A stretch of 64,000 bases of DNA from positions 124,001-188,000 of the IMG/VR virus record IMGVR_UViG_3300047321_000238; one strand, 5' to 3'. Below are positions 2,624 through 57,352 of the stretch, in pieces; positions within the stretch are counted from its first letter, which is position 1; the number at the start of each line of letters is the position of its first letter. Both the position numbers and the translations under genes were made by a program. A model generated the notes under the pieces. That model saw only the letters and a program-made list of their open reading frames with translations, ran no database searches and had not been told where the DNA came from.

Positions 2624-2716
2624 CATAAATACCCGAAAAATTGGACAAGACACTAATAAAAATTAAAAATAAAATAAATTTATGTGCACGAAGAGAGTGC
2701 AAGAAGGAGAAACAAT

Positions 2717-3166
2717 ATGTCATTAAATAGTTTTAACACAAACGGGAAATTACCACATTTCGAAGGAAACTTTAAAGCAGGAGAAGGAGAAAAGAAATCA
2801 TTCTTATCATGGGCTGTATCAGTTCAAAGAGATTTCAAACCTGCAGACGCTCAATACTATCCAGAAGATTTATTAAACTTTAAAGCTTTCGGACCAACAG
2901 CAGATTTCATTAATAAGTTCTTTGCTCAAGGAGATGGAATCATAATCACAGGAAGAATTCAAAGAGATGATGACTATGAAAAAGATGGTGCTACTGTAAA
3001 AGGTCAAATGTATGTATTAGTTGAAAAAGCATCTTTCGTTGTAGGAAAAGCAGGAGACGGTGGATCAGGTGGTGGTTCTAAACCAGCAGCATCTAAACCA
3101 GCACCAGGAGGAAAACCTCCAGTAGGAACTCCAGGAAAGAAACCAGTAGCTAAAAGACCATTCTAA
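2717..3166 (+). CDS. ssb: Single-stranded DNA-binding protein (OB fold) with basic Pro/Gly/Lys tail
   Basis: AVSVQRDFK, FKAFG, GDGIIITGRIQ pattern of SSB; SD AAGGAG before ATG 2717; ends in PF. Confidence 0.8.
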   Translation: MSLNSFNTNGKLPHFEGNFKAGEGEKKSFLSWAVSVQRDFKPADAQYYPEDLLNFKAFGPTADFINKFFAQGDGIIITGRIQRDDDYEKDGATVKGQMYVLVEKASFVVGKAGDGGSGGGSKPAASKPAPGGKPPVGTPGKKPVAKRPF

Positions 3167-12636: not shown

Positions 12637-12858
12637 ATGGAGTTATTAGATTATATAAAACAAATTCAAATCATAACTCCAAAGCCTGGAGACATTGTAA
12701 TTGTAACAGTTGAAGAAAACATTACAGACAATGTAACAGAACAATTAGCTAAGTGTTTAGTTAGTGAATTCAATGATAGAGGATTGACTAAAGACAACAT
12801 ATCAGTAATTTTATACAAAGGTGATGTAAAGCTTAATGTTATAAGAAAGGAAGAATAG
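12637..12858 (+). CDS. Small protein with ME[LI]L N-terminal tag (MELLDYI)
   Basis: SD AGGAG; starts 1 nt after the upstream stop. Confidence 0.75.
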   Translation: MELLDYIKQIQIITPKPGDIVIVTVEENITDNVTEQLAKCLVSEFNDRGLTKDNISVILYKGDVKLNVIRKEE

Positions 12859-16387: not shown

Positions 16388-16438
16388 TATTTAGTAGAGG
16401 GGCCTTTGAGCCCCGATACTTTTAAGGAGGAAATTAAT

Positions 16439-16654
16439 ATGGCATTATTTACTCAAAATGAAGATATTGCATGTGGAACTTGTGGCAACACGACATTCAC
16501 AGAAGACGAAATGATTAGAGTTGTAAAAAAACCAGTAAAATTCACATTAACTGAAACAGTTGTTTATGAAAAAGTAGTTGTAGGAAACTACTTAAAATGC
16601 ACTAAATGTGGTGCTTTTATGACCAATATATTAAAGACAAGCAAGGAGACATAA
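16439..16654 (+). CDS. Small zinc-ribbon protein
   Basis: CGTC...CTKC; SD AAGGAGG. Confidence 0.7.
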   Translation: MALFTQNEDIACGTCGNTTFTEDEMIRVVKKPVKFTLTETVVYEKVVVGNYLKCTKCGAFMTNILKTSKET

Positions 16655-16657
16655 CAT

Positions 16658-17362
16658 ATGGAACTATTAAAACTAAAAGAACAAATTGATACTAGACTTC
16701 CAGCAGGAGATATGTCTGGAATAAAATTAAGAGAATGTAATTGGTCTGTTAAAACAGCGGGCCCTAGTCCAGATGATAATAATAGAACTGAGTTGTTCTT
16801 CCTTGGATGTAAAAAAGCTTTTAATGGCAATCCATGCAAGGGTTGTTTTAATAGTTCAACATGGGATGAATCAAAAGCTCTATGGACGCATGATCCAATT
16901 CTAATGGCAAAACATATTAATAACAATTCACCTAATAAGTATATAACTATAGGTGGAGGAGAACCAACAGACCAAATAAGAAATTTAATTATTTTATGTA
17001 AAGAATTGAAAAAGTATAATTTTCATATTATGATATATACATGGAGAGAATTGAAAAATCTTATCATAAAAGAATATGAATATAAATTAGATCCATATTC
17101 TTTTCAATTTGAAATATATGAATTATTAAAATATATAGATATGGTTGTAGATGGTCAATTTAAAGAAGAAGAACGCTTATGGGATGGTTCTAAAGAAGAT
17201 GGACTAATAAGTTCAGTAGGCTCAGGGAATCAAATCATATGGGACATAAGAAATAATTTAGGATATAGTATGAGAGATTTAAAAGGAATTAAATTAGCAA
17301 AAAATAATGATTTAATTTATTTAGCAAAAAATAAAAATATAGAAAAAATTAATTTATATTAA
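16658..17362 (+). CDS. Radical SAM protein, NrdG/activase-like, with MELL N-terminus
   Basis: CX8CX2C cluster motif, ITIGGGEP, DMVVDG.F, GSGNQ. Confidence 0.8.
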   Translation: MELLKLKEQIDTRLPAGDMSGIKLRECNWSVKTAGPSPDDNNRTELFFLGCKKAFNGNPCKGCFNSSTWDESKALWTHDPILMAKHINNNSPNKYITIGGGEPTDQIRNLIILCKELKKYNFHIMIYTWRELKNLIIKEYEYKLDPYSFQFEIYELLKYIDMVVDGQFKEEERLWDGSKEDGLISSVGSGNQIIWDIRNNLGYSMRDLKGIKLAKNNDLIYLAKNKNIEKINLY

Positions 17363-17380
17363 AATTAGGAGGAATATAAT

Positions 17381-18163
17381 ATGTCAATATATAAGGTAAG
17401 TTTTCCAAGTCCACATCCAGTAGCAGGTGAAGATGCATATGATGTAGTGGATACAATGGAATTAAAAAACACAAAGTTGAATGATGATAGTATAACTCAA
17501 TTTAATGAAGCTAAAACTATGCATGTAATAAAATATGAATTTGGTCAAAGAATGGCAATGCCTTCTAATAAAGAAGAAATATTTATTAAAGCAAGTTGTG
17601 CTTCTATTAATATAGAGGTAGAAGAAAAATTAGACATTCAAACATTCGTAGATGAAGTAGCAAGAGGAGCATATCAAAGAAAGACTCCAGACAGTTCTAC
17701 TTATATAATAGAAGCAAAAACTAAACTTAAAACAGCTTTTGCATCTAAGTTATTAGAACAAGGATGTTTAGCTATCAATACAAGATATAATAGTTTTGGA
17801 TATATCTACTCAGGTGTAGATAAGATAGGAACTTTTGAAAATATAAATATTATTTCAGAGACTCAATTTACAATAGATGATTCTCAATCTATCGTTGAAT
17901 TAGATAATGCAAATAATTTATCTATGCAATTATATATAGAAAAACAATATCCATTCTTAATAGAAATAGACAGCATGAGATCTAAAACTACAGCAGTATT
18001 GAAATCTATATTGAATTTAGAATCAGAAGTACCACAAGAAGTAATAGACTTAAAACTTAAAGATGAATATAACACGCAAGAAGAATTCTTTGCTGCTAGA
18101 AGAAGCATTATAAATACAGATTTAGTTGAAGATAACTATAGTTTAGAAGATATGGATATATAA
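17381..18163 (+). CDS. Hypothetical protein upstream of AAA ATPase
   Basis: SD AGGAGG; 260-aa ORF. Confidence 0.75.
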   Translation: MSIYKVSFPSPHPVAGEDAYDVVDTMELKNTKLNDDSITQFNEAKTMHVIKYEFGQRMAMPSNKEEIFIKASCASINIEVEEKLDIQTFVDEVARGAYQRKTPDSSTYIIEAKTKLKTAFASKLLEQGCLAINTRYNSFGYIYSGVDKIGTFENINIISETQFTIDDSQSIVELDNANNLSMQLYIEKQYPFLIEIDSMRSKTTAVLKSILNLESEVPQEVIDLKLKDEYNTQEEFFAARRSIINTDLVEDNYSLEDMDI

Positions 18164-18181
18164 GAAAGGAGATTACGTACT

Positions 18182-19849
18182 ATGAAATCGTCAATACAAG
18201 AGCTTAAACTTCTGTTAAAAGCTAAGGCCAAATGTATATGGATTAAAACATATGAAGAGCAACAAGTAATGACAGATATAAAGAAAATCATAATAGATGA
18301 GTTACCTAACACAAAACTTATGAGTTGGAGTTTCTTTGAGGGTTTGCAAGAAGAACCTTTAACTAAAGCTGAAACTAAGAAGGACACAGAAAAAGGGGTT
18401 AGTCCAGACCGACTCCTTGACATTATTATAGATAGTCAAAAAAGTGGAGAAGAATCAACAAGGCAAGTTGATGGAAGAATGATTAAAGAAGTCCGAAACA
18501 AAAACGAAAACATATGGATACTTAAAGACTTCCATCTTTGCAATGAAGGGAAATCTATCCTTAGAGGAATTAGAGATACAAAAGAGAGAGCTGCTAATGA
18601 AATGATAAGCTATAATCCGATTATAGTTATTTCTCCTATTGTAAATATCCCTTTAGAACATGAAAAATTGTTCACAATACTAGAATATGAAACGCCAAAT
18701 AAAGAGGAAATAACAAAGTTTCTAAATGCTTTTGTAGAATTAATGAAAAAAAGTACAAAAGCTGATTACGTTATTCCAACCGATCAAGAGTTGGCAAATT
18801 GTATTAACTTAGCTAATGGCTTAACATTAGAAGAAATTAAGAGTTATGCAAACAGGTCACTCATTAAATATAATGCTTTATCAGAAAAGATATTTTATCA
18901 AGCTAGACTTGATTTAATAAGAAAAACAGGAATCCTTGAATACAAGGAATGTAACGCAGGCATAGACGATATGGGTGGTAATGAAGCATTTAAGCTTTGG
19001 GTAGATGACATTAAAGATACATTCACTCCAGAGGCAGAAGCATTTGGTGTGGAGAAATCTAAAGGTTACTTAGGTGTAGGTGTTCCAGGAACATCAAAGA
19101 CTATGAGTGCCGAGATAATGGCAAATACTTTAAATCTTCCTTTATTACAATTCAAGATGAGTTCAGTAATGCATTCACACGTTGGTCAATCAGAAAAAAA
19201 TATGGATAATGCACTTAATGTTGTTAAGGCATGTTCTCCATGTGTTTTACTTATTGATGAAGTTGAGAAGACATTGTCTGGAACAGCGTCAAGTAACGGT
19301 AGTGATGGTGGTACTTTAATGAGAGTCGTAGGACAATTGTTAGAATTTTTAGGGGGAGATGGTAGTAAGGATATCTTTACTATTATGACTTCAAATAATT
19401 CATCAGCACTTCCACCAGAGCTTACTAGAAGCGGAAGAATCGATACTATTTGGTACTTTGGATTACCAACAGAACCAGAAAGAGAAGAAATCTTTAAAAT
19501 TCATTTTGGTAAATCCAAATTAGAATTAGAAGATGGAATAATTGATTATGCTTCTAACAAGACATTGCACTTTACTGGAGCTGAAATAAAAGAAACAGTT
19601 AAAGTTGCAATAAGAAAAGCCTTTAAAAGATACAAGATCGATGGTAATAATAAAATAACAGAAGCTGATATAGATTCTGCAATACCTGAGATTATTCCTG
19701 TATACGAATCGTCAAAAGAGAAAATATCAGTGCTAGAAGAATACTACAAGACTAGAGCTAGATTTTCTAATACTATACCGAAATTAGAAGATGTAGAAAC
19801 ATTTAGTCACGATGACAATGATATAATCGATTTTGATATTAATGTATAA
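18182..19849 (+). CDS. Ycf46-like AAA+ ATPase
   Basis: Degenerate first domain (ILKDFH), Walker A GVPGTSKT, Walker B LLIDEVEK, LPPELTRSGRID, FTGAEI. Confidence 0.85.
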   Translation: MKSSIQELKLLLKAKAKCIWIKTYEEQQVMTDIKKIIIDELPNTKLMSWSFFEGLQEEPLTKAETKKDTEKGVSPDRLLDIIIDSQKSGEESTRQVDGRMIKEVRNKNENIWILKDFHLCNEGKSILRGIRDTKERAANEMISYNPIIVISPIVNIPLEHEKLFTILEYETPNKEEITKFLNAFVELMKKSTKADYVIPTDQELANCINLANGLTLEEIKSYANRSLIKYNALSEKIFYQARLDLIRKTGILEYKECNAGIDDMGGNEAFKLWVDDIKDTFTPEAEAFGVEKSKGYLGVGVPGTSKTMSAEIMANTLNLPLLQFKMSSVMHSHVGQSEKNMDNALNVVKACSPCVLLIDEVEKTLSGTASSNGSDGGTLMRVVGQLLEFLGGDGSKDIFTIMTSNNSSALPPELTRSGRIDTIWYFGLPTEPEREEIFKIHFGKSKLELEDGIIDYASNKTLHFTGAEIKETVKVAIRKAFKRYKIDGNNKITEADIDSAIPEIIPVYESSKEKISVLEEYYKTRARFSNTIPKLEDVETFSHDDNDIIDFDINV

Positions 19850-19861
19850 ATATGTTATAAT
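19833..19861 (+). promoter_or_regulatory. SigA-type promoter with extended -10
   Basis: TTGATA-17 bp-TATAAT, TG extension; same TATGTTATAAT 11-mer as at 2530 and 31345. Confidence 0.7.
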
Positions 19862-19912
19862 AAAACCAGAAATTAAAAGTCAAAAATTTAAAATTAGAAG
19901 GAGGACATTATT

Positions 19913-20320
19913 ATGTCACATTTAACACAATTCAGCAATAACTCATTGGTAAACACTAACAAGGACAGATTAGAAAAGTCTTTAAAGGAAATTGGTGTAA
20001 CTTTAGATTACAACAACAGAACTATAAAGAACCAATGGATTGAAGACACAGTAGACGCTGCTTTCATCGTAGATGGAAAAAGAATCGCTGCAGGAATTAA
20101 CTTTAAAATGGTTGATGGAAAAGAAACTGTTGAAGTTAATGGAGATTTTTATGGTACAGGCTTGAACCAAAAAACATTGACTAACCAAATCGCTCAAGTG
20201 TACCAAAAGAATGACGTTATAGCAAAATGCAAATCTCAAAGATGGTTTATAGATAATGAAAAAGATATCAAAGCAAATGAAAACGGAGATATAGTTATTC
20301 AAGCGTATAGATACGTTTAA
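19913..20320 (+). CDS. DUF1257 (Ycf35-like) protein
   Basis: MSH start, L..SL.EIG, GDFYG, QIAQVY pattern; adjacent to Ycf46-like ATPase. Confidence 0.7.
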   Translation: MSHLTQFSNNSLVNTNKDRLEKSLKEIGVTLDYNNRTIKNQWIEDTVDAAFIVDGKRIAAGINFKMVDGKETVEVNGDFYGTGLNQKTLTNQIAQVYQKNDVIAKCKSQRWFIDNEKDIKANENGDIVIQAYRYV

Positions 20321-20328
20321 GAGAGGAT

Positions 20329-20350
20329 GGGCTCGCAAGGGCCCCTTTTT
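20329..20350 (+). terminator. Rho-independent terminator
   Basis: GGGCTC-GCAA-GGGCCC then TTTTT. Confidence 0.7.
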
Positions 20351-20353
20351 ATT

Positions 20354-20878
20354 ATGGAAATATTAAATTATATAAATGCTAACAAGCATGAATTCAATGA
20401 AGATTATATGAAGAACAATGCAATTCATAAATCATTAGAAGAATTAAAAGAGTATCTAAAATTACACGCTACATTCTTAAGTAGACCTATATATTGTATA
20501 TATGAATGCTATGATCCAGAAGAAGAAGATGGTTGTTATATAAATATAAATTATTTAACTAATCATGCAGAAGGCCATTTGACAGATGATTATGAAACTG
20601 ATGCAGAAAATAATTTCTTTAATAGCTTACCATGCATAGATGAAGTAACAGAATCAACTTTTGGAATGCAAGGTTTATATAAAAATAAAGACAGAGAACA
20701 TATGACTGTAGATAGTAGAGGTCAAATTACGTATATAGATGTTGACTACTATGAACTTACAAAGAAAGAAGAAATCTGGTATCTTAAAAAGGTTATAAAA
20801 ATACTTTGCGAGTATCCAGCATTTCAAGTGTTAGAATCTCCATGGCATGAAGAAGAACATGAATATGATGATGATTAG
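20354..20878 (+). CDS. Acidic hypothetical protein with MEIL N-terminal tag (MEILNYI)
   Basis: ATG 20354 in frame with track ORF 20327; start chosen by the shared tag; no SD. Confidence 0.7.
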   Translation: MEILNYINANKHEFNEDYMKNNAIHKSLEELKEYLKLHATFLSRPIYCIYECYDPEEEDGCYININYLTNHAEGHLTDDYETDAENNFFNSLPCIDEVTESTFGMQGLYKNKDREHMTVDSRGQITYIDVDYYELTKKEEIWYLKKVIKILCEYPAFQVLESPWHEEEHEYDDD

Positions 20879-20912
20879 AAATTAATATAAAAATTTAGAG
20901 GAGGAAACAATA

Positions 20913-21122
20913 ATGGCACAAGATGAAAAACAAGTAGTAGAAATAACAATAAAGAAGGATGGTTCTTTTAGCTTTGAAGCAAAAGAAGGATTCCAAGGTG
21001 AAAGCTGCAGAAACCAAACTAAACAATTAGAAATGGTGTTAGGTGGAGATGCTACAGGAACTACAAATACTAAAGACTATTATGATGGTGGCGGAGACGT
21101 AAACATTAATCTTAAATTATAG
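20913..21122 (+). CDS. DUF2997 protein
   Basis: VEITIKKDG...GFQGESC...T..LE..LG pattern; SD GAGGAGG. Confidence 0.75.
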   Translation: MAQDEKQVVEITIKKDGSFSFEAKEGFQGESCRNQTKQLEMVLGGDATGTTNTKDYYDGGGDVNINLKL

Positions 21123-32505: not shown

Positions 32506-32790
32506 ATGGAGTTATTAAGTTTAGTTAATTACTTTCAAAGAGGAATTACATTAAATGAAAAACTTAATATTATTACTCAGGAAGCTCGTTATAGAATAAT
32601 TAGTAATGACTTTAAAAATGAAGTTACTATGAAAATCAAAAAAGCATTTGATGATTATAATTATTTTAATTATCGTGATAATCTTATTCCTACAGTTTCA
32701 TTTGATTTATATAAAATCAATATAGATGTAAAACAAATTGAAGCTCCATTGCATCCAAGTCTTACGGGAGGTGAAGGATGGAATTATTAA
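32506..32790 (+). CDS. ME[LI]L-tag protein, array member 1 (MELLSLV)
   Basis: ORF track; starts 1 nt after the upstream stop. Confidence 0.7.
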   Translation: MELLSLVNYFQRGITLNEKLNIITQEARYRIISNDFKNEVTMKIKKAFDDYNYFNYRDNLIPTVSFDLYKINIDVKQIEAPLHPSLTGGEGWNY

Positions 32791-33326
32791 AATATGTTCA
32801 AGAAATAGAAGAAAATATAATAACAATACCAAATGATTATGGACTTGATCCAAGTCGTATACGTAGTGGAATTTCTATTTATGGCACTGGAGGTTCAATA
32901 GTTGGCACTATGAGTAATATTGATTATCAACCTAGTGAAGACATAAGTGGGTTAATTAATACAAATCTTTCTGGTAGTATATCTCTTGCTAATACTTATG
33001 TACCTGGCGAGACAATGACGGGAAGATTAGAAGTACCTGCTTTTGATGATAGAATTATGCTTTCTGACGGTATGAGTTCAGCTTTTACAGCAGCTACTGC
33101 GTTAAGAATGGCTCCTTCTGTTTCTGAAGAGATTTTAGAAGCTATTCAAAATACAATTAGAGAAGCTATTATAGAAGAATTCAGAAGTATACGTGTTTCA
33201 CCAAGCGATACTGTTACTTATACTTATACTCCACCTAATCATATGGAATATATGACCACAAGAATAGATTTAAGAGCTGAACCAGAAACTTCAGCTCTTG
33301 ATGAACCTCCAACGGAGGATGAATAA
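32778..33326 (+). CDS. ME[LI]L-tag protein, array member 2 (MELLKYV)
   Basis: SD GGAGGTG. Confidence 0.75.
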   Translation: MELLKYVQEIEENIITIPNDYGLDPSRIRSGISIYGTGGSIVGTMSNIDYQPSEDISGLINTNLSGSISLANTYVPGETMTGRLEVPAFDDRIMLSDGMSSAFTAATALRMAPSVSEEILEAIQNTIREAIIEEFRSIRVSPSDTVTYTYTPPNHMEYMTTRIDLRAEPETSALDEPPTEDE

Positions 33327-33580: not shown

Positions 33581-33847
33581 ATGGAGATATTAAATTATAT
33601 AAATACAGAATTAACCAAACGTTTTAATAGTCCAGGAATAACACTTGCTAAAATACCATCAATAAGTAGGATGACATCTACAAATTTAACTAATGCTATT
33701 CAAAATAATTTTGAAAATAAAACATTTTATGTTGGTGATATTGTTATGAATAATGAAAATGGAAATAGAAATATGAATTTTTATATGTATAATGGAACAG
33801 AGTTTGAAATGATTACTCAAGGAGGAGGAATATATGGAATTACTTAG
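33581..33847 (+). CDS. ME[LI]L-tag protein, array member 4 (MEILNYI)
   Basis: Starts 1 nt after the upstream stop. Confidence 0.7.
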   Translation: MEILNYINTELTKRFNSPGITLAKIPSISRMTSTNLTNAIQNNFENKTFYVGDIVMNNENGNRNMNFYMYNGTEFEMITQGGGIYGIT

Positions 33848-34175
33848 TTTTTTAAATAGCTCAAGCATTGAAGATATTCCTCTGCTTGAGTTAGAATCTC
33901 AATTAAAACAATTAAAGCAAACAGTTAGGACAAACTATTTAACAGTTACTTATGGTTCAAGAATTAAACCAATTAAGTGTGTTAGAGAGTATTACTTAAA
34001 TCCACTAACTAAAAAGAAAGTACCTAAAATAAACATTGTAAATGCTTGTACTTCAATACATGGTACATTTGGCATTAAAGATTGTGCCTCCGTTGATTGT
34101 AATAGTTGTCATCGAAAGATGATAGAGAATTACTTTAATGGGGAGGCATATTTAATCAAAAATAATAAAAAATAG
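33834..34175 (+). CDS. ME[LI]L-tag protein, array member 5 (MELLSFL), Cys-rich C-terminus
   Basis: SD GGAGGAGG. Confidence 0.7.
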   Translation: MELLSFLNSSSIEDIPLLELESQLKQLKQTVRTNYLTVTYGSRIKPIKCVREYYLNPLTKKKVPKINIVNACTSIHGTFGIKDCASVDCNSCHRKMIENYFNGEAYLIKNNKK

Positions 34176-35444: not shown

Positions 35445-37664
35445 ATGCTAACGATAAGTAAAAGAGATGGTAGAGAACAAAAATTTGATTTATGGAAAGT
35501 TCAACATTCAATTAACCAAGCTGCATTTTCAATTAAGATGGAATTAAATACTATAGAATATGAAGAAGTCTTTAATAAATGCAAAGAATTAATTGGAGAA
35601 GATGGTGTTGTAGACGTAGAAAAACTACAAAATGCAATTGAAAAAGCATTGTATTTATGTGGTCACAGAAAAATAAGAGATTCTTATAAATCTTATAGAA
35701 AAGATCGTACACAAATTCGTGATACTAAATCAGATATCATGAAAGCCATTAATGCTATAGGTGTACAAACTGATAGAGATAATGCTAATGTTGGAAACAA
35801 CTTTAGTGCGAAGTTACTTAGAATAGCTTCTGAATCTAATAAGTGGACACAATTAGCTTTGATGCCTAAAGACCTAGCTAAAGAACATGAGAATTTAGAT
35901 TTATATTTTCATGACTTAGATAGTTATAACTTAACTCTTAATTGTCTTCATATACCTACAGGACAAATTCTTCAAAGAGGATTCAATACTGGATATGGAA
36001 CAATTAATAAGCCTAAGAGAATAGAAACAGCTGCAGATTTATCATGCATTCTTATGCAATCAACTCAAAATGATATGTTTGGTGGTCAATCACATCCAAA
36101 CTTTGATAATGATATGGCTCCATTTGTAGAATCTTCAAGACAAGAAATTGCTGAAGAACATTATTCTAGAATTGGTGAATTTGTTTCTGACGGATATTTT
36201 CATTATATCACTAAGAATAAAGAATCAATAGAAAAAGATATTGAAGTGAAAGTTGATAAATCAGTACATCAAGCTATGCAAGGAGTGGTTTATAATTTAA
36301 ATACCATGCATTGCCGTGCAGGTTCTCAAGTTCCATTTAGTTCAATTAATATAGGACTACCTGAATCTGAAGATGCAGCACTAGTATGCAAAGCGTTTTT
36401 AGAAGAATATGATAAAGGTCTAGGAAAAGGTGAACAACCTATATTCCCTAACATCATATTCAGAGTTAAATCAGGAGTTAATAGAGAGCCATCAGATCCA
36501 TATTACTACTTATTTAAGTTAGCTTGTAAAGTAGCTGCTAAAAGAATGAATCCTACATTTATGAATATAGATGCAGACTTCAATAAAGAGTATTATGATA
36601 AGGGATATATTCCTGCAACTATGGGATGCAGAACTGCATTAATGTCTAATGTTAATGGAGATCCTGGTGTTGAGGGTAGAGGTAACAATGCACCTACTAC
36701 TATTAATCTTCCTAGATTAGGTATTAGAGCAATGCTTTATGCAGATGAAGCAGTCAAAGAAGTAAACATGGTTGTTACAAGATATGATAATTACTATAAT
36801 AGTATTGTTGTTGCAAAGTTCTTTGAATTATTTGATGAAAAGATATCTTTATCTAGAGATTCATTAATGCATAGATACGGAGTACTGAAGAATCTAAGAG
36901 TTAAAGATTTACCATTCGTGGCAGGTCAAGGATTAATGAAAGGTTCTGAAGGGCTAGGACCAAATGATTCTATTGAACCAATACTTAAAAATGGTACTTG
37001 GGGAATAGGGTTTACAGGGCTTGCTGAAACATTAATAGCTATATGTGGTAAACATCATGGTGAAAGTGAATACGCAAGAGACTTAGGTGAGCAAATCATT
37101 ACTCATTTAAGAAATAGATGTGACGAATATAAAGAGATAGACAAAATGAATTGGAGTTGTTACGCAACACCTGCAGAAGGTCTTTCAGGCAAATTCGTTC
37201 CAGTGGATAGAAAAATATATGGAAATATTCCAGGTGTAACTGATAAAGATTACTATACAAATAGTTATCATGTTCCAGTTGATTGTATTATATCTATTAA
37301 AGATAAAATAGCAATCGAAGCACCATACCATAAACTTTGTAATGGAGGACATATTTCTTATATTGAAATGGATGATTATCCAGATGGAGACACTATTGAA
37401 AATATAATTAGATATGCTTACGAAAATACAAATATAAGTTATATGGGTATTAACTTTCATATAAGATATTGTAAAGACTGTGGAACTTATCTTCATGGAG
37501 AAAATGAATGTCCAAGTTGTGACAGTCATGAAATCCAAGGTATCTCTAGAGTTACAGGATATTTAAGTCTTGATGAGAGATTTGGTCCAGGAAAGTCTGC
37601 AGAAAGAGCAGCGAGAACTAATCATAATGGAAATCATAAAAATAATTATTATTTGGAGGAATAG
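35445..37664 (+). CDS. nrdD: Anaerobic ribonucleoside-triphosphate reductase (class III) with ATP cone
   Basis: ISKRDG ATP cone, QNDMFGGQS, ATMGCR, YATPAE, CxxC...CxxC, ISRVTGYL glycyl-radical motif. Confidence 0.95.
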   Translation: MLTISKRDGREQKFDLWKVQHSINQAAFSIKMELNTIEYEEVFNKCKELIGEDGVVDVEKLQNAIEKALYLCGHRKIRDSYKSYRKDRTQIRDTKSDIMKAINAIGVQTDRDNANVGNNFSAKLLRIASESNKWTQLALMPKDLAKEHENLDLYFHDLDSYNLTLNCLHIPTGQILQRGFNTGYGTINKPKRIETAADLSCILMQSTQNDMFGGQSHPNFDNDMAPFVESSRQEIAEEHYSRIGEFVSDGYFHYITKNKESIEKDIEVKVDKSVHQAMQGVVYNLNTMHCRAGSQVPFSSINIGLPESEDAALVCKAFLEEYDKGLGKGEQPIFPNIIFRVKSGVNREPSDPYYYLFKLACKVAAKRMNPTFMNIDADFNKEYYDKGYIPATMGCRTALMSNVNGDPGVEGRGNNAPTTINLPRLGIRAMLYADEAVKEVNMVVTRYDNYYNSIVVAKFFELFDEKISLSRDSLMHRYGVLKNLRVKDLPFVAGQGLMKGSEGLGPNDSIEPILKNGTWGIGFTGLAETLIAICGKHHGESEYARDLGEQIITHLRNRCDEYKEIDKMNWSCYATPAEGLSGKFVPVDRKIYGNIPGVTDKDYYTNSYHVPVDCIISIKDKIAIEAPYHKLCNGGHISYIEMDDYPDGDTIENIIRYAYENTNISYMGINFHIRYCKDCGTYLHGENECPSCDSHEIQGISRVTGYLSLDERFGPGKSAERAARTNHNGNHKNNYYLEE

Positions 37665-38252: not shown

Positions 38253-38716
38253 TGAATAAATATATGGGATTTAAATTATTAGAAGCTGAACCAATGACTC
38301 TTGGTGATTACAACAAGATGAAAGGATGGACGATTCCAGAAAATGAAGATCCATCGAAAGAAGGTTATGTTGTAAAATATTCAGATGATTATATTAGCTG
38401 GAGCCCTAAAGATGTATTTGAAGCATCTTATTTGCAAGTTAAAAATAATCCTAATCTTGCTAGTGGAGTTTCTGTTAGTCAAGAAATGGTTGATAACTTT
38501 ATTAAAGAAGTTTATGTACAAACAATTGGAACAAAAACAACTTTAGTTAGAGTTGAATTATCAAATGGATTTGAGATAGTAGAATCAAGTTCATGTGTAG
38601 ATGCAGCTAATTATAATGAAACTATGGGAAAAGAAATATGCTTAGAAAGAATAAAAAACAAAGTATGGGAATTGCTTGGTTTCTTATTACAAACAGCATA
38701 TAAAGGCATAAAGTAA
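38252..38716 (+). CDS. Two-domain phage protein: AEPM...SWSPK domain + N4 gp49/Sf6 gp66-like domain
   Basis: YMGFKLLEAEPM...EGYVVKY...SWSPKDVFEASY; LSNGF...SSCVD..NYN..MG.EIC...K.W..LGFLL. Confidence 0.65.
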   Translation: MNKYMGFKLLEAEPMTLGDYNKMKGWTIPENEDPSKEGYVVKYSDDYISWSPKDVFEASYLQVKNNPNLASGVSVSQEMVDNFIKEVYVQTIGTKTTLVRVELSNGFEIVESSSCVDAANYNETMGKEICLERIKNKVWELLGFLLQTAYKGIK

Positions 38717-39222
38717 TGCTTAACTTAGCTGGAGAATTAAAAAACAGTAATGCAAATGGACCAGGTTTAAGATATGTAATATTCACACAGGGGTGTTCAC
38801 ACCCCGTTAAGTGTGAAGGATGTCATAATTCTCATACTTGGGAGAAAAGAGACAATATGTTAATAACAGTAGATGAAATGGCATTAGATATTGTATCTGA
38901 AATGCCATTAATTAATGGTGTAACTTTTTCAGGTGGAGAACCATTTGACCAAGCTGCAGCGTTAACTGAATTGGCTATTAAGTTAAAGTCTGCTGGATTA
39001 AGTGTGATGTGTTATACAGGTTATACTTATGAACAGATAAGATCCTACGCAGTAATGCGTTCCATGGAATTTACTCAAATGAATCGACTATTAGACAATA
39101 TAGACATATTGGTTGATGGAAAGTTTGATATCAATCAAATTAAATGTGCGGGCCTCTATAGAGGATCTGCTAATCAAAGAATGCTATATTTAGAAAAAGG
39201 ACAAATAATCAAAATAGAATAA
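38716..39222 (+). CDS. nrdG: Anaerobic RNR activating enzyme
   Basis: NGPGLRYVIFTQGC, CX5CX2C, GVTFSGGEP, DILVDG, YRGSANQR. Confidence 0.9.
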   Translation: MLNLAGELKNSNANGPGLRYVIFTQGCSHPVKCEGCHNSHTWEKRDNMLITVDEMALDIVSEMPLINGVTFSGGEPFDQAAALTELAIKLKSAGLSVMCYTGYTYEQIRSYAVMRSMEFTQMNRLLDNIDILVDGKFDINQIKCAGLYRGSANQRMLYLEKGQIIKIE

Positions 39223-51338: not shown

Positions 51339-51506
51339 ATGGAAATATTAAAACACTTACAAGACGTAGAAAAGGAAATTGAAAAAGAATGGACTGAGAT
51401 ATTATTTTACCGTGTGTGGAGAAGATATGGATACACTACTGGAACTGAAGTTGTAATAGGTAGAAATGGAACTAAATACACAGCAATATCAAGAGATAAA
51501 GAATAG
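51339..51506 (+). CDS. ME[LI]L-tag protein (MEILKHL; 55 aa, below track cut-off)
   Basis: SD AAGGAG; open frame to TAG 51504-51506. Confidence 0.7.
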   Translation: MEILKHLQDVEKEIEKEWTEILFYRVWRRYGYTTGTEVVIGRNGTKYTAISRDKE

Positions 51507-51701
51507 ATGGAAATATTAAAATACTTACAAGATTTAAAAGAAGAAGAGATGACACTTCCATATATAAAATATGAAGGTGATACTTTAACAAAAGAAATAT
51601 TTGATAAGATGATAAGCTCTTTAGGAATTCCTAGTCATCTGCTTAATATTGAGCCAGCAATACCAAGAAGTTACAGTAGAGGAAGAAGAGGAGGTCAATA
51701 A
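51507..51701 (+). CDS. ME[LI]L-tag protein (MEILKYL)
   Basis: ATG directly after TAG. Confidence 0.7.
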   Translation: MEILKYLQDLKEEEMTLPYIKYEGDTLTKEIFDKMISSLGIPSHLLNIEPAIPRSYSRGRRGGQ

Positions 51702-52175
51702 GTGGAATTACTTAATTATGTAAATAACATGTATGAGTTTATGGCATTAGGATCCATGGAGAACAAAACAGAAGCTAATATTAAAGAACATATCATATGC
51801 TTCTTTAGTAATGACTATGACAAGTCATGGTGTTCTAACATAAATACAAACATGCCATGCATAACAGAAGCAGAAATAGAAGATGAGTTGTATAACTTAA
51901 ACATATTAATAGCTTATGAGACTTATATAGTAAATAATGGCGGACGTAATTGTGCCTTTTGTTTATTCAGACATAAAGTAACTAGAGAATACTATTATCT
52001 TAAATGCGATATAGATTCAGCTCATGGATTTGAAGGTTATTTTATATTAAACAAATTAGAGAAACTATCTGAGATGTTACCTATAGATGTAAGTGAATCA
52101 TCACAAGCTAAAGCAACTGAAGTAAAAGAAAAGATAAGAGATTATATAAGAGAATATGTTCCTATGCGTGATTAG
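51702..52175 (+). CDS. ME[LI]L-tag protein (GTG start, MELLNYV)
   Basis: SD GGAGG; GTG directly after TAA. Confidence 0.75.
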   Translation: MELLNYVNNMYEFMALGSMENKTEANIKEHIICFFSNDYDKSWCSNINTNMPCITEAEIEDELYNLNILIAYETYIVNNGGRNCAFCLFRHKVTREYYYLKCDIDSAHGFEGYFILNKLEKLSEMLPIDVSESSQAKATEVKEKIRDYIREYVPMRD

Positions 52176-57070: not shown

Positions 57071-57352
57071 ATGGAAATATTAAAAAGTATCGAAGAAATA
57101 CGAATAGCTAACTGTATAAAGCAAGCTATTGAAGATGGAAAACTTGTTCCTAATGGTAAAAACTTAAGTCGAATTAAGAAACAACTAAGAGAAGAACATG
57201 GACTAATCTTTTTAAATATCATAAGTTCATCAAGGAATGGCCTGCAAGTAATGGCTAAGACAAAAAGTTATAGTTATACATATAATTATAATGGAGATGT
57301 GAAAGAAATAAGTTTAATAGGAGGAATAAGAAAGAATGTTAGTACTAACTAG
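57071..57352 (+). CDS. ME[LI]L-tag protein (MEILKSI)
   Basis: SD AAGGAGG favours ATG 57071. Confidence 0.7.
   Translation: MEILKSIEEIRIANCIKQAIEDGKLVPNGKNLSRIKKQLREEHGLIFLNIISSSRNGLQVMAKTKSYSYTYNYNGDVKEISLIGGIRKNVSTN

What the first reader, a model, noticed from the sequence alone, without database searches (positions are those of the whole stretch)
16439..21122. Ycf46-like AAA ATPase / DUF1257 / DUF2997 module with an upstream radical SAM enzyme
Seen: zinc ribbon, radical SAM, 260-aa unknown, AAA ATPase (Walker A variant GVPGTSKT), DUF1257-like (with its own promoter and terminator) and DUF2997-like. Known: Ycf46 and Ycf35 homologues occur in cyanobacteria and red-lineage plastids, and the module's mechanism is unresolved as far as I know. 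Inference: an uncharacterised protein-remodelling machine in a phage, possibly acting on the 260-aa partner or on ME[LI]L-tagged clients (two tagged genes lie in this block).
Basis: partly seen in the sequence, partly recalled or inferred. Interest (0 to 1): 0.65.

Follow-up and report, generated by a model that had tools for sequence, protein, structure and literature searches.

The report
Phage Ycf46-type AAA+ / Ycf35 / DUF2997 module
A 248-kb jumbo phage carries a widespread but uncharacterised three-protein set, a Ycf46-like ATP-driven protein remodeller plus a small Ycf35-like/DUF2997 pair, which shows that these long-mysterious cyanobacterial and plastid "ycf" proteins form one functional unit that can now be tested.

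Summary
Window 16439-21122 encodes, all on the + strand:
- a Zn ribbon;
- a divergent NrdG-like radical-SAM protein;
- a 260-aa orphan ("U260");
- a 555-aa AAA+ ATPase;
- a DUF1257 protein;
- an inserted 174/183-aa gene;
- a DUF2997 protein.

The AAA+ is a full-length Ycf46 homologue. It has a degenerate AAA-like N-terminal tier and an intact classical-clade ATPase tier.

The DUF1257 protein is Ycf35-like, with the family's N-terminal MSH hallmark.

AAA + DUF1257 + DUF2997 lie together in 49 of 80 phage loci and 57 of 80 bacterial or archaeal loci. DUF1257 and DUF2997 are fused in two phages, and a controlled complex prediction supports their binding.

In 6 of 6 cyanobacterial genomes checked, Ycf46 is followed by a DUF1257 paralogue, while Ycf35 sits beside DUF2997 elsewhere in the genome.

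Most likely this is a hexameric unfoldase or remodeller with a dedicated heterodimeric partner. Its client is unknown.

The radical-SAM gene is not the phage's NrdG, which lies beside NrdD. A radical-SAM gene abuts the module in about six separate AAA lineages, so a link is plausible but unproven.

U260 is confined to this jumbo-phage clade. The ME[LI]L "tag" is real (29 genes) but nothing links it to the module.

Function is unresolved. Interest is moderate to high.

The parts
16439..16654 (+). Small Zn-ribbon protein (71 aa, two CxxC pairs); first gene of a tightly packed run of four genes
   Evidence: ORF and weak Zn-ribbon hits. Hairpin at 16399-16414, then SD AAGGAGG before the ATG. Homologues occupy the same position in 21 jumbo-clade loci.
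16658..17362 (+). Divergent NrdG/PflA-type radical-SAM activase paralogue (234 aa); cluster motif C-x8-C-x2-C at residues 51-63 (nt 16808-16846); GGEP SAM motif present
   Evidence: Fer4_12 E 2.8e-14. NrdG equivalog at only 51.8 of 126.1 bits. Cys-motif alignment. Canonical NrdG lies elsewhere. No NrdD within 7 kb in any module locus that carries such a gene.
17381..18163 (+). U260: fast-evolving orphan protein (260 aa) with a conserved acidic-hydrophobic C-terminal tail (family consensus D..FDD.F; here SLEDMDI)
   Evidence: No family hits. No PDB or Atlas match. 206 representatives at E<=1e-3, all about 240-300 aa. Same slot in all jumbo-clade loci. Tail conservation.
18182..19849 (+). Ycf46-type AAA+ ATPase (555 aa): degenerate AAA-like N-tier (aa 1-263, nt 18182-18970) plus catalytic classical-clade AAA tier (aa about 264-530)
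   Evidence: PF00004 E 4e-24. Profile matches named Ycf46 proteins over positions 3-520, E 6.5e-113. BLASTP 29% identity over residues 6-527. AAA tier resembles VAT/Cdc48/p97 D2. N-tier model pLDDT 94 with an AAA+ fold.
19079..19102 (+). Walker A (GVPGTSKT, residues 300-307)
   Evidence: G300, P302, G303 and K306 are invariant in 19 homologues.
19244..19261 (+). Walker B (VLLIDE, residues 355-360). Downstream lie sensor-1 N405 and the two arginines R416/R419 of the second region of homology.
   Evidence: D359, E360, N405, R416 and R419 are invariant.
19833..19861 (+). Sigma-70-like promoter consensus match (extended -10) between the AAA and DUF1257 genes
   Evidence: 11 of 12 matches plus TG, the best in the region. 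Sequence read. Consensus match only.
19913..20320 (+). DUF1257/Ycf35-like protein (135 aa). N-terminus MSH; near-invariant D78 and Y97.
   Evidence: PF06868 E 7.3e-4. 27 of 37 relatives hit PF06868. hhalign to Nostoc Ycf35 at 99.3%. MSH hallmark (PMC13060386). Model pLDDT 90.
20329..20344 (+). GC-rich hairpin followed by a T-run (terminator-like), directly after the DUF1257 stop codon
20354..20878 (+). Lineage-specific inserted gene (174 aa from ATG 20354; 183 aa from ATG 20327). A member of the phage's MEILNYIN-headed gene set. Not part of the conserved module.
   Evidence: No homologue in any related locus. N-terminal motif. In relatives this slot holds other cargo: Thy1, TerD.
20913..21122 (+). 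DUF2997 protein (69 aa) with the family's single invariant Cys (C32, nt 21006-21008)
   Evidence: PF11211 E 9.7e-9. Alignment of 38 sequences: C32 invariant, G17 and G29 near-invariant. Predicted to bind DUF1257.

Best explanation
This is a phage-borne copy of a widespread mobile module with three proteins.

1. A Ycf46-type AAA+ protein. It has an N-terminal tier with an AAA+ fold but no nucleotide-binding motifs. Its C-terminal tier belongs to the classical clade (Cdc48/FtsH/PAN-like), with intact Walker A and B motifs, sensor-1, arginine fingers and a pore-loop V-G.
2. A DUF1257 (Ycf35-like) protein.
3. A DUF2997 protein.

The AAA+ most likely forms a two-tier hexamer that uses ATP to unfold or disassemble a protein client through its central pore. 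DUF1257 and DUF2997 most likely form a heterodimer. In the model, the C-terminal strand of DUF1257 pairs with the N-terminal strand of DUF2997. That heterodimer is the ATPase's dedicated partner, either an adaptor or regulator, or its obligate client.

In this jumbo-phage clade the module is extended upstream by a compact run of three genes: a Zn ribbon, a divergent NrdG-like radical-SAM activase (C-x8-C-x2-C), and a fast-evolving 260-aa protein with an acidic C-terminal tail. These probably supply a lineage-specific client or cofactor.

Shown: gene content, family membership, co-occurrence, the gene fusions, intact catalytic motifs, and the fold of the N-tier.

Inferred: hexamer formation, threading, the role of the heterodimer, and any role of the radical-SAM protein and U260.
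For: Family membership:
- The AAA profile matches Nostoc proteins named Ycf46 end to end (E 6.5e-113 and 2.3e-102).
- Pairwise identity is 29% over residues 6-527.
- The DUF1257 profile matches canonical Ycf35 at 99.3%.
- DUF2997 scores above Pfam's cut-off.

Co-occurrence:
- Both partners lie within about 3 kb of the AAA gene, on the same strand, in 49 of 80 phage loci and 57 of 80 bacterial or archaeal loci.
- Among loci with at least 3 kb on both sides the counts are 42 of 61 and 40 of 48.
- The median gap between DUF1257 and DUF2997 is 13 nt in phage loci and -3 nt in cellular loci.
- Gene order differs between clades, so the linkage is not simple inherited synteny.

Physical link between the two small proteins:
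- DUF1257 and DUF2997 are fused in one ORF in L049 and L052.
- Complex prediction gave ipSAE 0.80 against a best control of 0.49. In the tool's calibration that mark was reached by 58 of 80 solved complexes and 2 of 110 mismatched pairs. Runs agreed in at least 84% of contacts and the partner's pLDDT was at least 58. My own alignments were used, so the calibration counts hold only roughly.

Cyanobacteria:
- In 6 of 6 genomes checked, the best Ycf46 is followed 210-250 bp downstream by a DUF1257 paralogue.
- In the same genomes DUF2997 sits directly before Ycf35 at a second locus.

ATPase:
- Catalytic residues are invariant in 19 homologues.
- The AAA tier is closest to the D2 of VAT/Cdc48/p97 (E 4e-68).
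- The N-tier model (pLDDT 94) matches RFC, RuvBL, ClpC and Hsp104 AAA+ modules (E 2.5e-7, TM about 0.5).

Cultured phages also carry the set: Agrobacterium phage JP1 and Rhodobacter phage RcTiptonus.
Against: - No experiment bears on any of this.
- No client, protease partner or phenotype is known.
- DUF1257 has no informative structural relative (best Foldseek E 5e-3; best VIA-align Z 6.3, a common alpha+beta arrangement).
- About a quarter of AAA homologues have no detectable DUF1257 or DUF2997. One phage clade, which includes mycobacteriophage cluster O, instead has an unrelated 275-aa neighbour. The ATPase can therefore work with other partners.
- The invariant residues (S2/H3/D78 of DUF1257 and C32 of DUF2997) are mostly outside the confidently predicted interface. 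Their purpose is unexplained.
- The complex prediction is a model's confidence, not a measurement.
- Binding of the heterodimer to the AAA+ was not tested.
Confidence: 0.6

Rival explanations
1. The radical-SAM gene is simply a second anaerobic ribonucleotide-reductase activase (NrdG). It serves nucleotide metabolism and is a neighbour of the AAA module only because both sit in the DNA-metabolism block.
For: - Its best matches are NrdG families (TIGR02491 E 8.3e-14; phrog_626 E 4.8e-18).
- The phage encodes NrdD.
- The surrounding genes are UDG, thymidylate kinase, Rad52, UvrD, SNF2, gyrase, ligase and DnaE.
Against: - A far better NrdG (Fer4_12 E 4.5e-33) lies 1 kb from NrdD, 18 kb away from this gene.
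- This paralogue scores well under the NrdG cut-off and has a conserved 5-residue insertion in the cluster loop.
- NrdG-like genes abut the AAA module in the jumbo clade and in L023, L026, L037, L054, L085/86 and L145. On the AAA tree this needs at least 6 changes of state.
- No NrdD lies within 7 kb in any of those loci.
Confidence: 0.35
2. The module is an anti-phage defence or counter-defence system. In bacteria it would be an accessory immune ATPase, like IetA of the IetAS system. In phages it would be a captured copy used against host defence or competing phages.
For: - The AAA tier matches PADLOC IetA models (E 2.3e-23) and NCBIfam IteA.
- Several Planctomycetota and Nostoc genomes hold two or three copies.
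- The gene set is mobile between phages and cells.
- The neighbours evolve fast and vary between genomes.
Against: - The IetA match covers only the generic AAA domain.
- No IetS-like protease is present, and no partner protein hits any PADLOC model.
- Ycf46, Ycf35 and DUF2997 look like core genes in the cyanobacteria checked and Ycf35 is plastid-encoded (PMC13060386). In Synechocystis, ycf46 lies in a stress-responsive operon (PMC7496141).
Confidence: 0.15
3. The module handles iron-sulfur or radical enzymes. DUF1257-DUF2997 would bind or escort a [4Fe-4S] protein, and the AAA+ would remodel or recycle damaged copies. The radical-SAM protein would be the client in jumbo phages, and ferredoxin Fed7 the client in cyanobacteria.
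For: - In cyanobacteria DUF2997-Ycf35 is followed, with overlapping stop and start codons, by a 4Fe-4S ferredoxin (cluster g in PMC4284462).
- In phages a [4Fe-4S] radical-SAM gene repeatedly abuts the module.
- DUF2997 has one invariant Cys, and DUF1257 has a conserved N-terminal Ser-His.
- The Synechocystis ycf46 operon responds to iron deficiency and oxidative stress (PMC7496141).
Against: - This rests on gene neighbourhood alone.
- Most module loci have neither a ferredoxin nor a radical-SAM gene nearby.
- One Cys and one His per heterodimer cannot ligate a cluster without oligomerisation.
- No metal-site geometry was tested.
Confidence: 0.15
4. The genes are only syntenic neighbours. The AAA+ would be an independent replication or recombination factor, and DUF1257 and DUF2997 would be unrelated small proteins.
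For: - The block lies among replication and repair genes.
- DUF1257 has its own promoter-like and terminator-like sites.
- An unrelated gene separates DUF1257 from DUF2997 here.
Against: - The trio recurs in unrelated phages, Planctomycetota, Nostoc, Deltaproteobacteria and Archaeoglobi, with different gene orders and different flanking genes.
- Gene fusions exist, and the predicted complex passes its controls.
Confidence: 0.07

Closest known systems
Cyanobacterial and plastid Ycf46 (Slr0374 of Synechocystis, 'stress-responsive protein Ycf46')
   Same: Colinear over the whole length, including the roughly 260-aa N-terminal tier and the Ser/Gly-rich stretch ending in DGGT that follows Walker B. 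29% identity and E 7e-69 to a Nostoc Ycf46. Profile E 1e-113. A DUF1257 gene lies next to it in both cases.
   Different: This copy is encoded by a phage of a non-photosynthetic setting. It is preceded by a radical-SAM gene and an orphan protein. It has a hairpin insertion in the N-tier and an acidic-hydrophobic C-terminal tail. The function of Ycf46 itself is unknown; only a link to CO2 use has been reported (as cited in PMC7496141).
Ycf35 (DUF1257) with DUF2997 and ferredoxin Fed7: cluster g of cyanobacteria (PMC4284462)
   Same: The same two small families lie side by side. The N-terminal MSH and the single invariant Cys are kept.
   Different: In cyanobacteria the order is DUF2997, then Ycf35, then ferredoxin, with no AAA gene at that locus. 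Here the order is AAA, DUF1257, an inserted gene, then DUF2997, and there is no ferredoxin.
Classical-clade AAA+ unfoldases: VAT/Cdc48/p97 D2, PAN/Rpt, FtsH, Vps4
   Same: The ATPase tier shares their motifs (Walker A and B, sensor-1, second region of homology with two Arg, a pore-loop x-V-G followed by SE). It is closest in sequence to VAT/Cdc48 D2.
   Different: There is no double-psi-barrel N domain, no protease domain and no MIT domain. The first tier is a nucleotide-free pseudo-AAA module. The aromatic pore-loop residue is replaced by His, Phe, Leu or Lys.
Adaptor-assisted unfoldases such as ClpX-SspB and ClpA-ClpS (what it may work like; recalled from memory)
   Same: A small dedicated partner is encoded beside the ATPase. 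Short C-terminal peptides are conserved on neighbouring proteins (U260 and the 275-aa family), which could tether them to the ATPase.
   Different: There is no homology to these systems, no peptidase, and tethering is untested.
NrdG / PflA glycyl-radical-enzyme activases
   Same: Fer4_12 domain, GGEP SAM motif, and the G-C...C-x2-C-[FH]-N-x-x-T-W signature.
   Different: The spacing is C-x8-C-x2-C. The protein is about 80 aa longer. It scores below the equivalog cut-off, is not beside NrdD, and co-exists with a canonical NrdG.
IetAS anti-phage system (IetA ATPase)
   Same: The AAA domain is similar (E 2.3e-23).
   Different: Only the generic AAA domain matches. No IetS protease is present. IetA lacks the Ycf46 N-tier alignment: the match covers query residues 286-523 only.

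Membership tests
Ycf46 AAA+ family | Full-length colinear homology to proteins named Ycf46, including the N-terminal ~260-aa region | tested here: met
   Profile A1 matches two Nostoc proteins over positions 3-520 of 538 (E 6.5e-113 and 2.3e-102). Their clusters are named 'ycf46' or 'stress-responsive protein Ycf46' by NCBI and UniRef. BLASTP gives 29% identity over residues 6-527 v 3-489, E 7e-69. In the tree, Ycf46 nests inside the family.
Ycf46 AAA+ family | Intact classical AAA motifs (Walker A, Walker B, sensor-1, two SRH arginines) | tested here: met
   G300, P302, G303, K306, D359, E360, N405, R416 and R419 are invariant in 19 homologues. PF00004 E 4e-24.
DUF1257 / Ycf35 (PF06868) | Score above Pfam's gathering threshold | tested here: not met
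   20.2 bits v a 22.2-bit cut-off, E 7.3e-4. However, 27 of 37 aligned relatives match PF06868 (best 1.9e-15).
DUF1257 / Ycf35 (PF06868) | Profile-level homology to a canonical Ycf35 over its full length | tested here: met
   hhalign of A3 v Nostoc Ycf35 (L185:1741-2127): 99.3% probability, E 1.7e-20, 125 columns.
DUF1257 / Ycf35 (PF06868) | N-terminal M-S-H hallmark (described for Ycf35 in PMC13060386) | tested here: met
   The window protein starts MSHLTQF. M1 and S2 are invariant, and H3 is present in most of the 36 sequences.
DUF2997 (PF11211) | Score above the gathering threshold, and the conserved G-x-x-C core | tested here: met
   35.4 bits v 24.1, E 9.7e-9. C32 is invariant and G29 and G17 are at least 90% conserved in 38 sequences.
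NrdG (class III RNR activase) | Equivalog-level score | tested here: not met
   TIGR02491 gives 51.8 bits v a cut-off of 126.1; PRK11121 gives 31.5 v 199.
NrdG (class III RNR activase) | Canonical C-x3-C-x2-C cluster motif | tested here: not met
   The motif is C-x8-C-x2-C, conserved across the jumbo clade.
NrdG (class III RNR activase) | Genomic pairing with NrdD | tested here: not met
   NrdD is at 35445-37664 with its own NrdG at 38716-39222. No NrdD lies within 7 kb of any module-linked radical-SAM gene.
Radical-SAM superfamily (activase branch, Fer4_12) | Fer4_12 domain above the cut-off, three cluster cysteines, GGEP SAM motif | tested here: met
   Fer4_12 scores 54 bits v 22. The cysteines and GGGEP are conserved in the alignment. 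Activity is not testable here.
Cdc48/p97/VAT (type II AAA) | Two nucleotide-binding AAA tiers preceded by a double-psi-barrel N domain | tested here: not met
   Only the C-terminal tier matches by sequence. The N-terminal 263 residues fold as one AAA+ module with no P-loop. No separate N domain is present.
IetAS defence system | IetA ATPase together with an IetS protease | tested here: not met
   The IetA models match residues 286-523 only. None of the seven neighbouring proteins matches any PADLOC model except a weak pVip hit for the radical-SAM protein.

The most novel reading that the evidence does not exclude
The module would be a radical-enzyme service station. The NrdG-like activase would install or use a protein radical, or its [4Fe-4S] cluster, on a module component or on U260. 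The Ycf46-type AAA+, with the Ycf35-DUF2997 heterodimer, would load, extract or recycle that oxygen-sensitive protein. The same logic, with ferredoxin Fed7 in place of the radical-SAM enzyme, would then explain the unknown role of ycf46 and ycf35 in cyanobacteria and plastids.
Probability: 0.12. Interest if true: 0.85.

Novelty: new variant of a known kind. Interest (0 to 1): 0.62.

Why it matters
ycf46 and ycf35 are among the conserved plastid and cyanobacterial reading frames whose function has stayed open for decades.

- **A single unit.** The two families, together with DUF2997, travel as one module through phages, Planctomycetota, Deltaproteobacteria, archaea and cyanobacteria. The two small proteins are sometimes fused and are predicted to bind each other.
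- **One testable system.** Three separate mysteries become one. Matching phenotypes and physical complexes can be sought in Synechocystis, and in the cultured phages JP1 and RcTiptonus.
- **For phage biology.** This is a common, unannotated ATP-driven machine. In a large clade of gut-type jumbo phages it is coupled to an unusual radical-SAM enzyme.
- **Literature.** I found no paper in the searchable library that describes the three-gene module.

Tried and rejected
- **Nucleotide similarity to known phages:** none found.
- **Single-protein locus scan:** found nothing. It succeeded once an alignment was used.
- **DUF1257 fold search:** no convincing relative. Foldseek's best was a BirA-like hit at E 5e-3. 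VIA-align's best was Z 6.3 to KA1-type domains, within the range the tool calls common.
- **U260:** no Pfam, PHROG, NCBIfam or PADLOC family, no PDB sequence match and no Atlas lead; the Atlas's own model has pLDDT 0.35. A tally over 80 members gave only scattered chance Pfam hits.
- **U260 as a glycyl-radical substrate:** the best-conserved F-G-Y segment is not invariant, so the idea has no support.
- **U260 v the other AAA neighbours:** hhalign showed U260, the 317-aa family and the 275-aa family are unrelated to each other and to DUF1257 and DUF2997.
- **A C-terminal tail shared by the AAA+ and its neighbours:** the tail is clearly enriched in U260 (11 of 20 v 27 of 296 genome genes) and in the 275-aa family (7 of 12). 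It is not above background for the AAA family as a whole (18 of 151). I keep it only as a lead.
- **U260 tail as an SSB-tail or clamp-motif mimic:** this rests on memory. The phage's own SSB-like protein (2684-3166) ends in a basic ...KRPF. Not pursued.
- **ME[LI]L-tagged clients:** No link to the module was found.
- **Extended Planctomycetota operon:** only a weak Prok-JAB hit (9.6e-5) and a weak tail-protein PHROG hit, which are uninformative. An Atlas lead to DUF3150 for the 317-aa family was not tested.
- **The look-up of sequencing runs:** No read evidence on expression or habitat was obtained, and I did not try another route.
- **First structure job:** I rebuilt the alignment without that row.

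Full report
**Setting**

The window is bases 124001-188000 of a 247,883-bp virus record with direct terminal repeats. GC content is about 30% and almost all genes are on the + strand.

The neighbourhood is the phage's DNA-metabolism block:
- upstream: GyrB, GyrA, a sigma factor, RecA, UDG, thymidylate kinase and Rad52;
- downstream: a staphylococcal-type nuclease, UvrD and SNF2 helicases;
- further on: NrdD, NrdG, NAD-dependent ligase and a DnaE-type polymerase.

No nucleotide-level relative exists among deposited phages.

**The observation**

- The Zn-ribbon gene starts at 16439. It follows a hairpin and a strong Shine-Dalgarno sequence.
- The radical-SAM, 260-aa and AAA genes follow with gaps of 3, 18 and 18 nt. 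These four genes look like one transcription unit.
- Between the AAA stop and the DUF1257 start lies the best sigma-70-like match of the region.
- Directly after the DUF1257 stop lies a GC-rich hairpin with a T-run. These are consensus matches only.
- A further gene (20327 or 20354 to 20878) separates DUF1257 from DUF2997.
- Domain calls: Fer4_12 E 2.8e-14, AAA E 4e-24, DUF2997 E 9.7e-9, and DUF1257 E 7.3e-4, which is just below Pfam's cut-off.

**The ATPase**

An alignment of 19 homologues shows invariant Walker A (G-x-P-G-x-x-K), Walker B (D359-E360), sensor-1 N405 and the arginines R416 and R419. The pore loop is x-V-G-x-S-E.

Against solved structures, profile positions 238-490 match the D2 tier of VAT, Cdc48 and p97 at E about 1e-68. 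The first 240 residues match nothing by sequence.

I modelled residues 1-263 with a 63-sequence alignment (pLDDT 94). The model has an AAA+ fold, an alpha/beta core plus a helical lid. It matches RFC subunits, RuvBL, ORC, ClpC and Hsp104 (E 2.5e-7 and weaker, TM about 0.5). Where a P-loop should be there is no Gly or Lys.

The protein is therefore a two-tier AAA+ with a degenerate first tier and a catalytic second tier.

The same profile matches two Nostoc proteins from end to end (E 6.5e-113 and 2.3e-102). Public records name those proteins Ycf46 or 'stress-responsive protein Ycf46'. Pairwise identity is 29% over residues 6-527. On a tree of 153 family members the two Ycf46 proteins sit inside the diversity of the phage and bacterial sequences.

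**The two small proteins**

*DUF1257.* Iterative profiles built from the window's proteins recover a DUF1257-like family whose members nearly all begin M-S-H. D78 and Y97 are near-invariant. A recent preprint independently describes MSH as the hallmark of Ycf35 (PMC13060386). Of 37 aligned members, 27 match PF06868. The profile matches canonical Nostoc Ycf35 at 99.3% probability. The model is confident (pLDDT 90), but its fold has no informative relative.

*DUF2997.* This family has one invariant cysteine, in a G-x-x-C context.

**Co-occurrence**

I scanned a viral collection with the AAA alignment. It gave 80 loci from contigs of 5 to 263 kb, with AAA identities of 25-60%.

- Both a DUF1257 and a DUF2997 gene lie within about 3 kb, on the same strand, in 49 of them.
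- Among loci with at least 3 kb on both sides the count is 42 of 61.
- The median gap between the two small genes is 13 nt.

The same scan of one genome per prokaryotic species gave 80 loci. They were mostly Planctomycetota, Nostoc and Deltaproteobacteria, with an Archaeoglobi archaeon. Of these, 57 have both partners, or 40 of 48 with full flanks.

Gene order differs. It is usually AAA, DUF1257, DUF2997 in phages, and DUF1257, DUF2997, AAA in cells. The linkage is therefore not one inherited arrangement.

Two phage contigs encode DUF1257 and DUF2997 as a single protein (L049, L052).

The cultured phages Agrobacterium JP1 and Rhodobacter RcTiptonus carry the set, annotated only as 'AAA-ATPase' and hypothetical proteins.

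**Predicted binding**

A complex prediction of the window's DUF1257 and DUF2997, using my own alignments, scored ipSAE 0.80 against a best control of 0.49.

- In the tool's calibration that mark was reached by 58 of 80 solved complexes and 2 of 110 mismatched pairs.
- The three runs agreed in at least 84% of contacts.
- The partner's pLDDT was at least 58.
- The calibration holds only roughly because my own alignments were used.

The confident contacts pair DUF1257's last strand (residues 124-135) and long helix with DUF2997's first strand (residues 3-20). The model supports binding; it does not show it.

**Cyanobacteria**

In Nostoc sp. UCD121 and five other cyanobacterial genomes (6 of 6), two things hold:
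- the best Ycf46 match is followed 210-250 bp downstream by a shorter DUF1257 paralogue;
- at a second locus, DUF2997 sits directly before canonical Ycf35.

In Nostoc, Ycf35 is followed by a 4Fe-4S ferredoxin with overlapping stop and start codons. This is the published 'cluster g' (PMC4284462).

Synechocystis ycf46 (slr0374) lies in a stress-responsive operon with two hypothetical genes (PMC7496141). By position, the downstream gene may be the DUF1257 paralogue. I did not verify this.

The phage and Planctomycetota modules bring together in one place what cyanobacteria keep at two loci. This is the main comparative argument that the three families act together.

**The radical-SAM gene**

It belongs to the NrdG/PflA activase branch. 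It has the Fer4_12 domain, the GGEP motif and the C...C-x2-C-F-N-x-x-T-W signature. It is not the phage's NrdG:
- a much better NrdG lies beside NrdD 18 kb away;
- this copy scores 51.8 bits against an equivalog cut-off of 126.1;
- its first two cluster cysteines are eight residues apart instead of three, an insertion conserved in all jumbo-clade orthologues.

NrdG-like genes with the ordinary spacing also touch the module in other lineages:
- just before the AAA gene in L054;
- just after it in L085/86;
- just after DUF2997 in L037;
- near the module in L023, L026 and a Spirochaete contig, L145.

On the AAA tree this pattern needs at least six changes of state. None of these loci has NrdD within 7 kb.

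This makes a functional tie plausible. I have no background rate for such adjacencies and no candidate substrate, so I give the 'just a second NrdG' rival 0.35.

**The 260-aa protein (U260)**

Its sequence evolves fast, but the slot between the radical-SAM and AAA genes is always filled by a protein of 240-320 aa in the jumbo clade.

A profile search of 1.84 billion representatives found 206 relatives, all of similar length. Three distant ones that I looked up lie in the same gene order. The family is therefore confined to one diverse jumbo-phage clade, and its adjacency carries no independent weight.

It has no known family or fold.

Its one conserved feature is an acidic-hydrophobic C-terminal tail, consensus D..FDD.F. 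The tail is enriched against the genome background (11 of 20 v 27 of 296). It could be a docking peptide. I could not test that.

**The ME[LI]L motif**

This motif is real and striking. Twenty-nine of about 296 genes begin ME[LIV]L-x-[YHF]-[IVL]-[NQ], where about two would be expected. Nearly every occurrence of ME[LI]L in the proteome is at an N-terminus.

Some of these genes are paralogues. Others share only the head. The upstream DNA is not conserved.

- The inserted gene at 20354 is a member.
- The radical-SAM protein shares only MELLK, and its orthologues start differently.
- None of the flanks of related loci holds a tagged gene.

Nothing ties the motif to the AAA module. It deserves a study of its own.

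**Other partners**

- *275-aa family.* A monophyletic phage clade, including mycobacteriophage cluster O (Catdawg gp97 and gp95), lacks DUF1257 and DUF2997. It has an unrelated 275-aa protein (phrog_11021) right after the AAA gene.
- *317-aa family and further genes.* Many Planctomycetota and some phage loci add a 317-aa protein directly after the AAA gene, followed by several more genes. One of those has a weak JAB-like match.
- *Nostoc accessory copies.* These are followed by a WGR-domain protein.

The ATPase therefore works with exchangeable neighbours, which fits an adaptor- or client-defined remodeller.

**Verdict**

What is there is a phage copy of a widespread module: a Ycf46-type two-tier AAA+ with a Ycf35-like/DUF2997 heterodimer. 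In this clade it is extended by a Zn ribbon, an atypical radical-SAM activase and an orphan protein.

The mechanism I commit to is an ATP-driven hexameric unfoldase or remodeller whose specificity is set by the heterodimer (confidence 0.6). The client and the biological purpose remain unknown.

Nothing in the papers I could search describes the module.

Noticed in passing
Whole genome. In the window: 12637-12858, 20354-20878, 32506-32790, 32778-33326, 33581-33847, 33834-34175, 51339-51506, 51507-51701, 51702-52175, 57071-57352.: 29 of about 296 predicted genes begin with ME[LIV]L-x-[YHF]-[IVL]-[NQ] (for example MELLKYINN), where about 2 would be expected. Nearly all ME[LI]L occurrences in the proteome are N-terminal. 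Some of the genes are 105-aa paralogues clustered at genome 68.6-72.9 kb; others share only the head. The upstream DNA is not conserved. This could be a targeting or processing signal, or a coding-region DNA or RNA element.
   Followed up: partly
window 35445-37664 and 38716-39222: The phage's canonical class III ribonucleotide reductase NrdD (PF13597, E 5e-180) and its NrdG (Fer4_12, E 4.5e-33). This NrdG also has a non-standard cluster spacing, C-x5-C-x2-C.
   Followed up: partly
window 20321-20912; L002:8091-9254; L190:7650-9221: In the jumbo clade, the interval between the DUF1257 and DUF2997 genes is a variable cargo slot. It holds the MEILNYIN-headed gene here, a Thy1 thymidylate synthase in one relative and a TerD protein in another.
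   Followed up: partly
L049:9271-9942 and L052:9460-10131: Natural fusion proteins carry DUF1257 followed by DUF2997 in one reading frame.
   Followed up: partly
L004 (Mycobacterium phage Catdawg gp97/gp95), L032, L039, L041, L043, L051, L057, L059, L068, L081, L087, L088: A monophyletic clade of Ycf46-type AAA genes in phages has no DUF1257 or DUF2997. Instead an unrelated protein of about 275 aa (phrog_11021) follows directly downstream. Many of these proteins end in I-D-L-D-like tails.
   Followed up: partly
L133:4809-10443, L090, L116, L128, L148, L167, L170 and others: Planctomycetota loci, and some viral contigs, extend the module with a 317-aa protein right after the AAA gene (Atlas lead: DUF3150), two proteins of about 85 aa, a protein of about 365 aa, and a protein of about 300 aa with a weak Prok-JAB match (E 9.6e-5). 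In this clade both the AAA and the 317-aa protein carry a basic R-R-R-[VI] stretch near the C-terminus.
   Followed up: partly
L151:6715-7275 and 16 other loci, mostly Nostoc: Accessory Nostoc copies of the module are followed by a WGR-domain protein (PF05406, E 6.5e-19).
   Followed up: no
L093 (Gemella MAG, 208-kb contig), L094 (Clostridium MAG), L095 (Bacilli faecal MAG, 238-kb contig): Contigs binned into Bacillota MAGs carry the jumbo-phage arrangement: radical SAM, a U260-like gene, AAA, DUF1257, DUF2997. They are probably related jumbo phages. This hints at a gut or oral Bacillota host range for the clade.
   Followed up: no
window 2684-3166: The only SSB-like (OB-fold) match in the genome (PF00436, E 6e-6, just below the cut-off). 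It ends in a Gly/Pro/Lys-rich basic tail, ...KRPF, rather than the usual acidic SSB tail.
   Followed up: no
L006:6048-6443 (Rhodobacter phage RcTiptonus gene 62): The DUF1257 homologue reads I-S-H upstream of its annotated start. The true start may be a rare codon that yields the family's M-S-H N-terminus, in which case the deposited annotation is probably truncated.
   Followed up: no
window 16399-16414: A GC-rich hairpin with a T-rich tail lies directly after the Rad52 gene and before the Zn-ribbon gene. It may mark the start of the four-gene unit.
   Followed up: no
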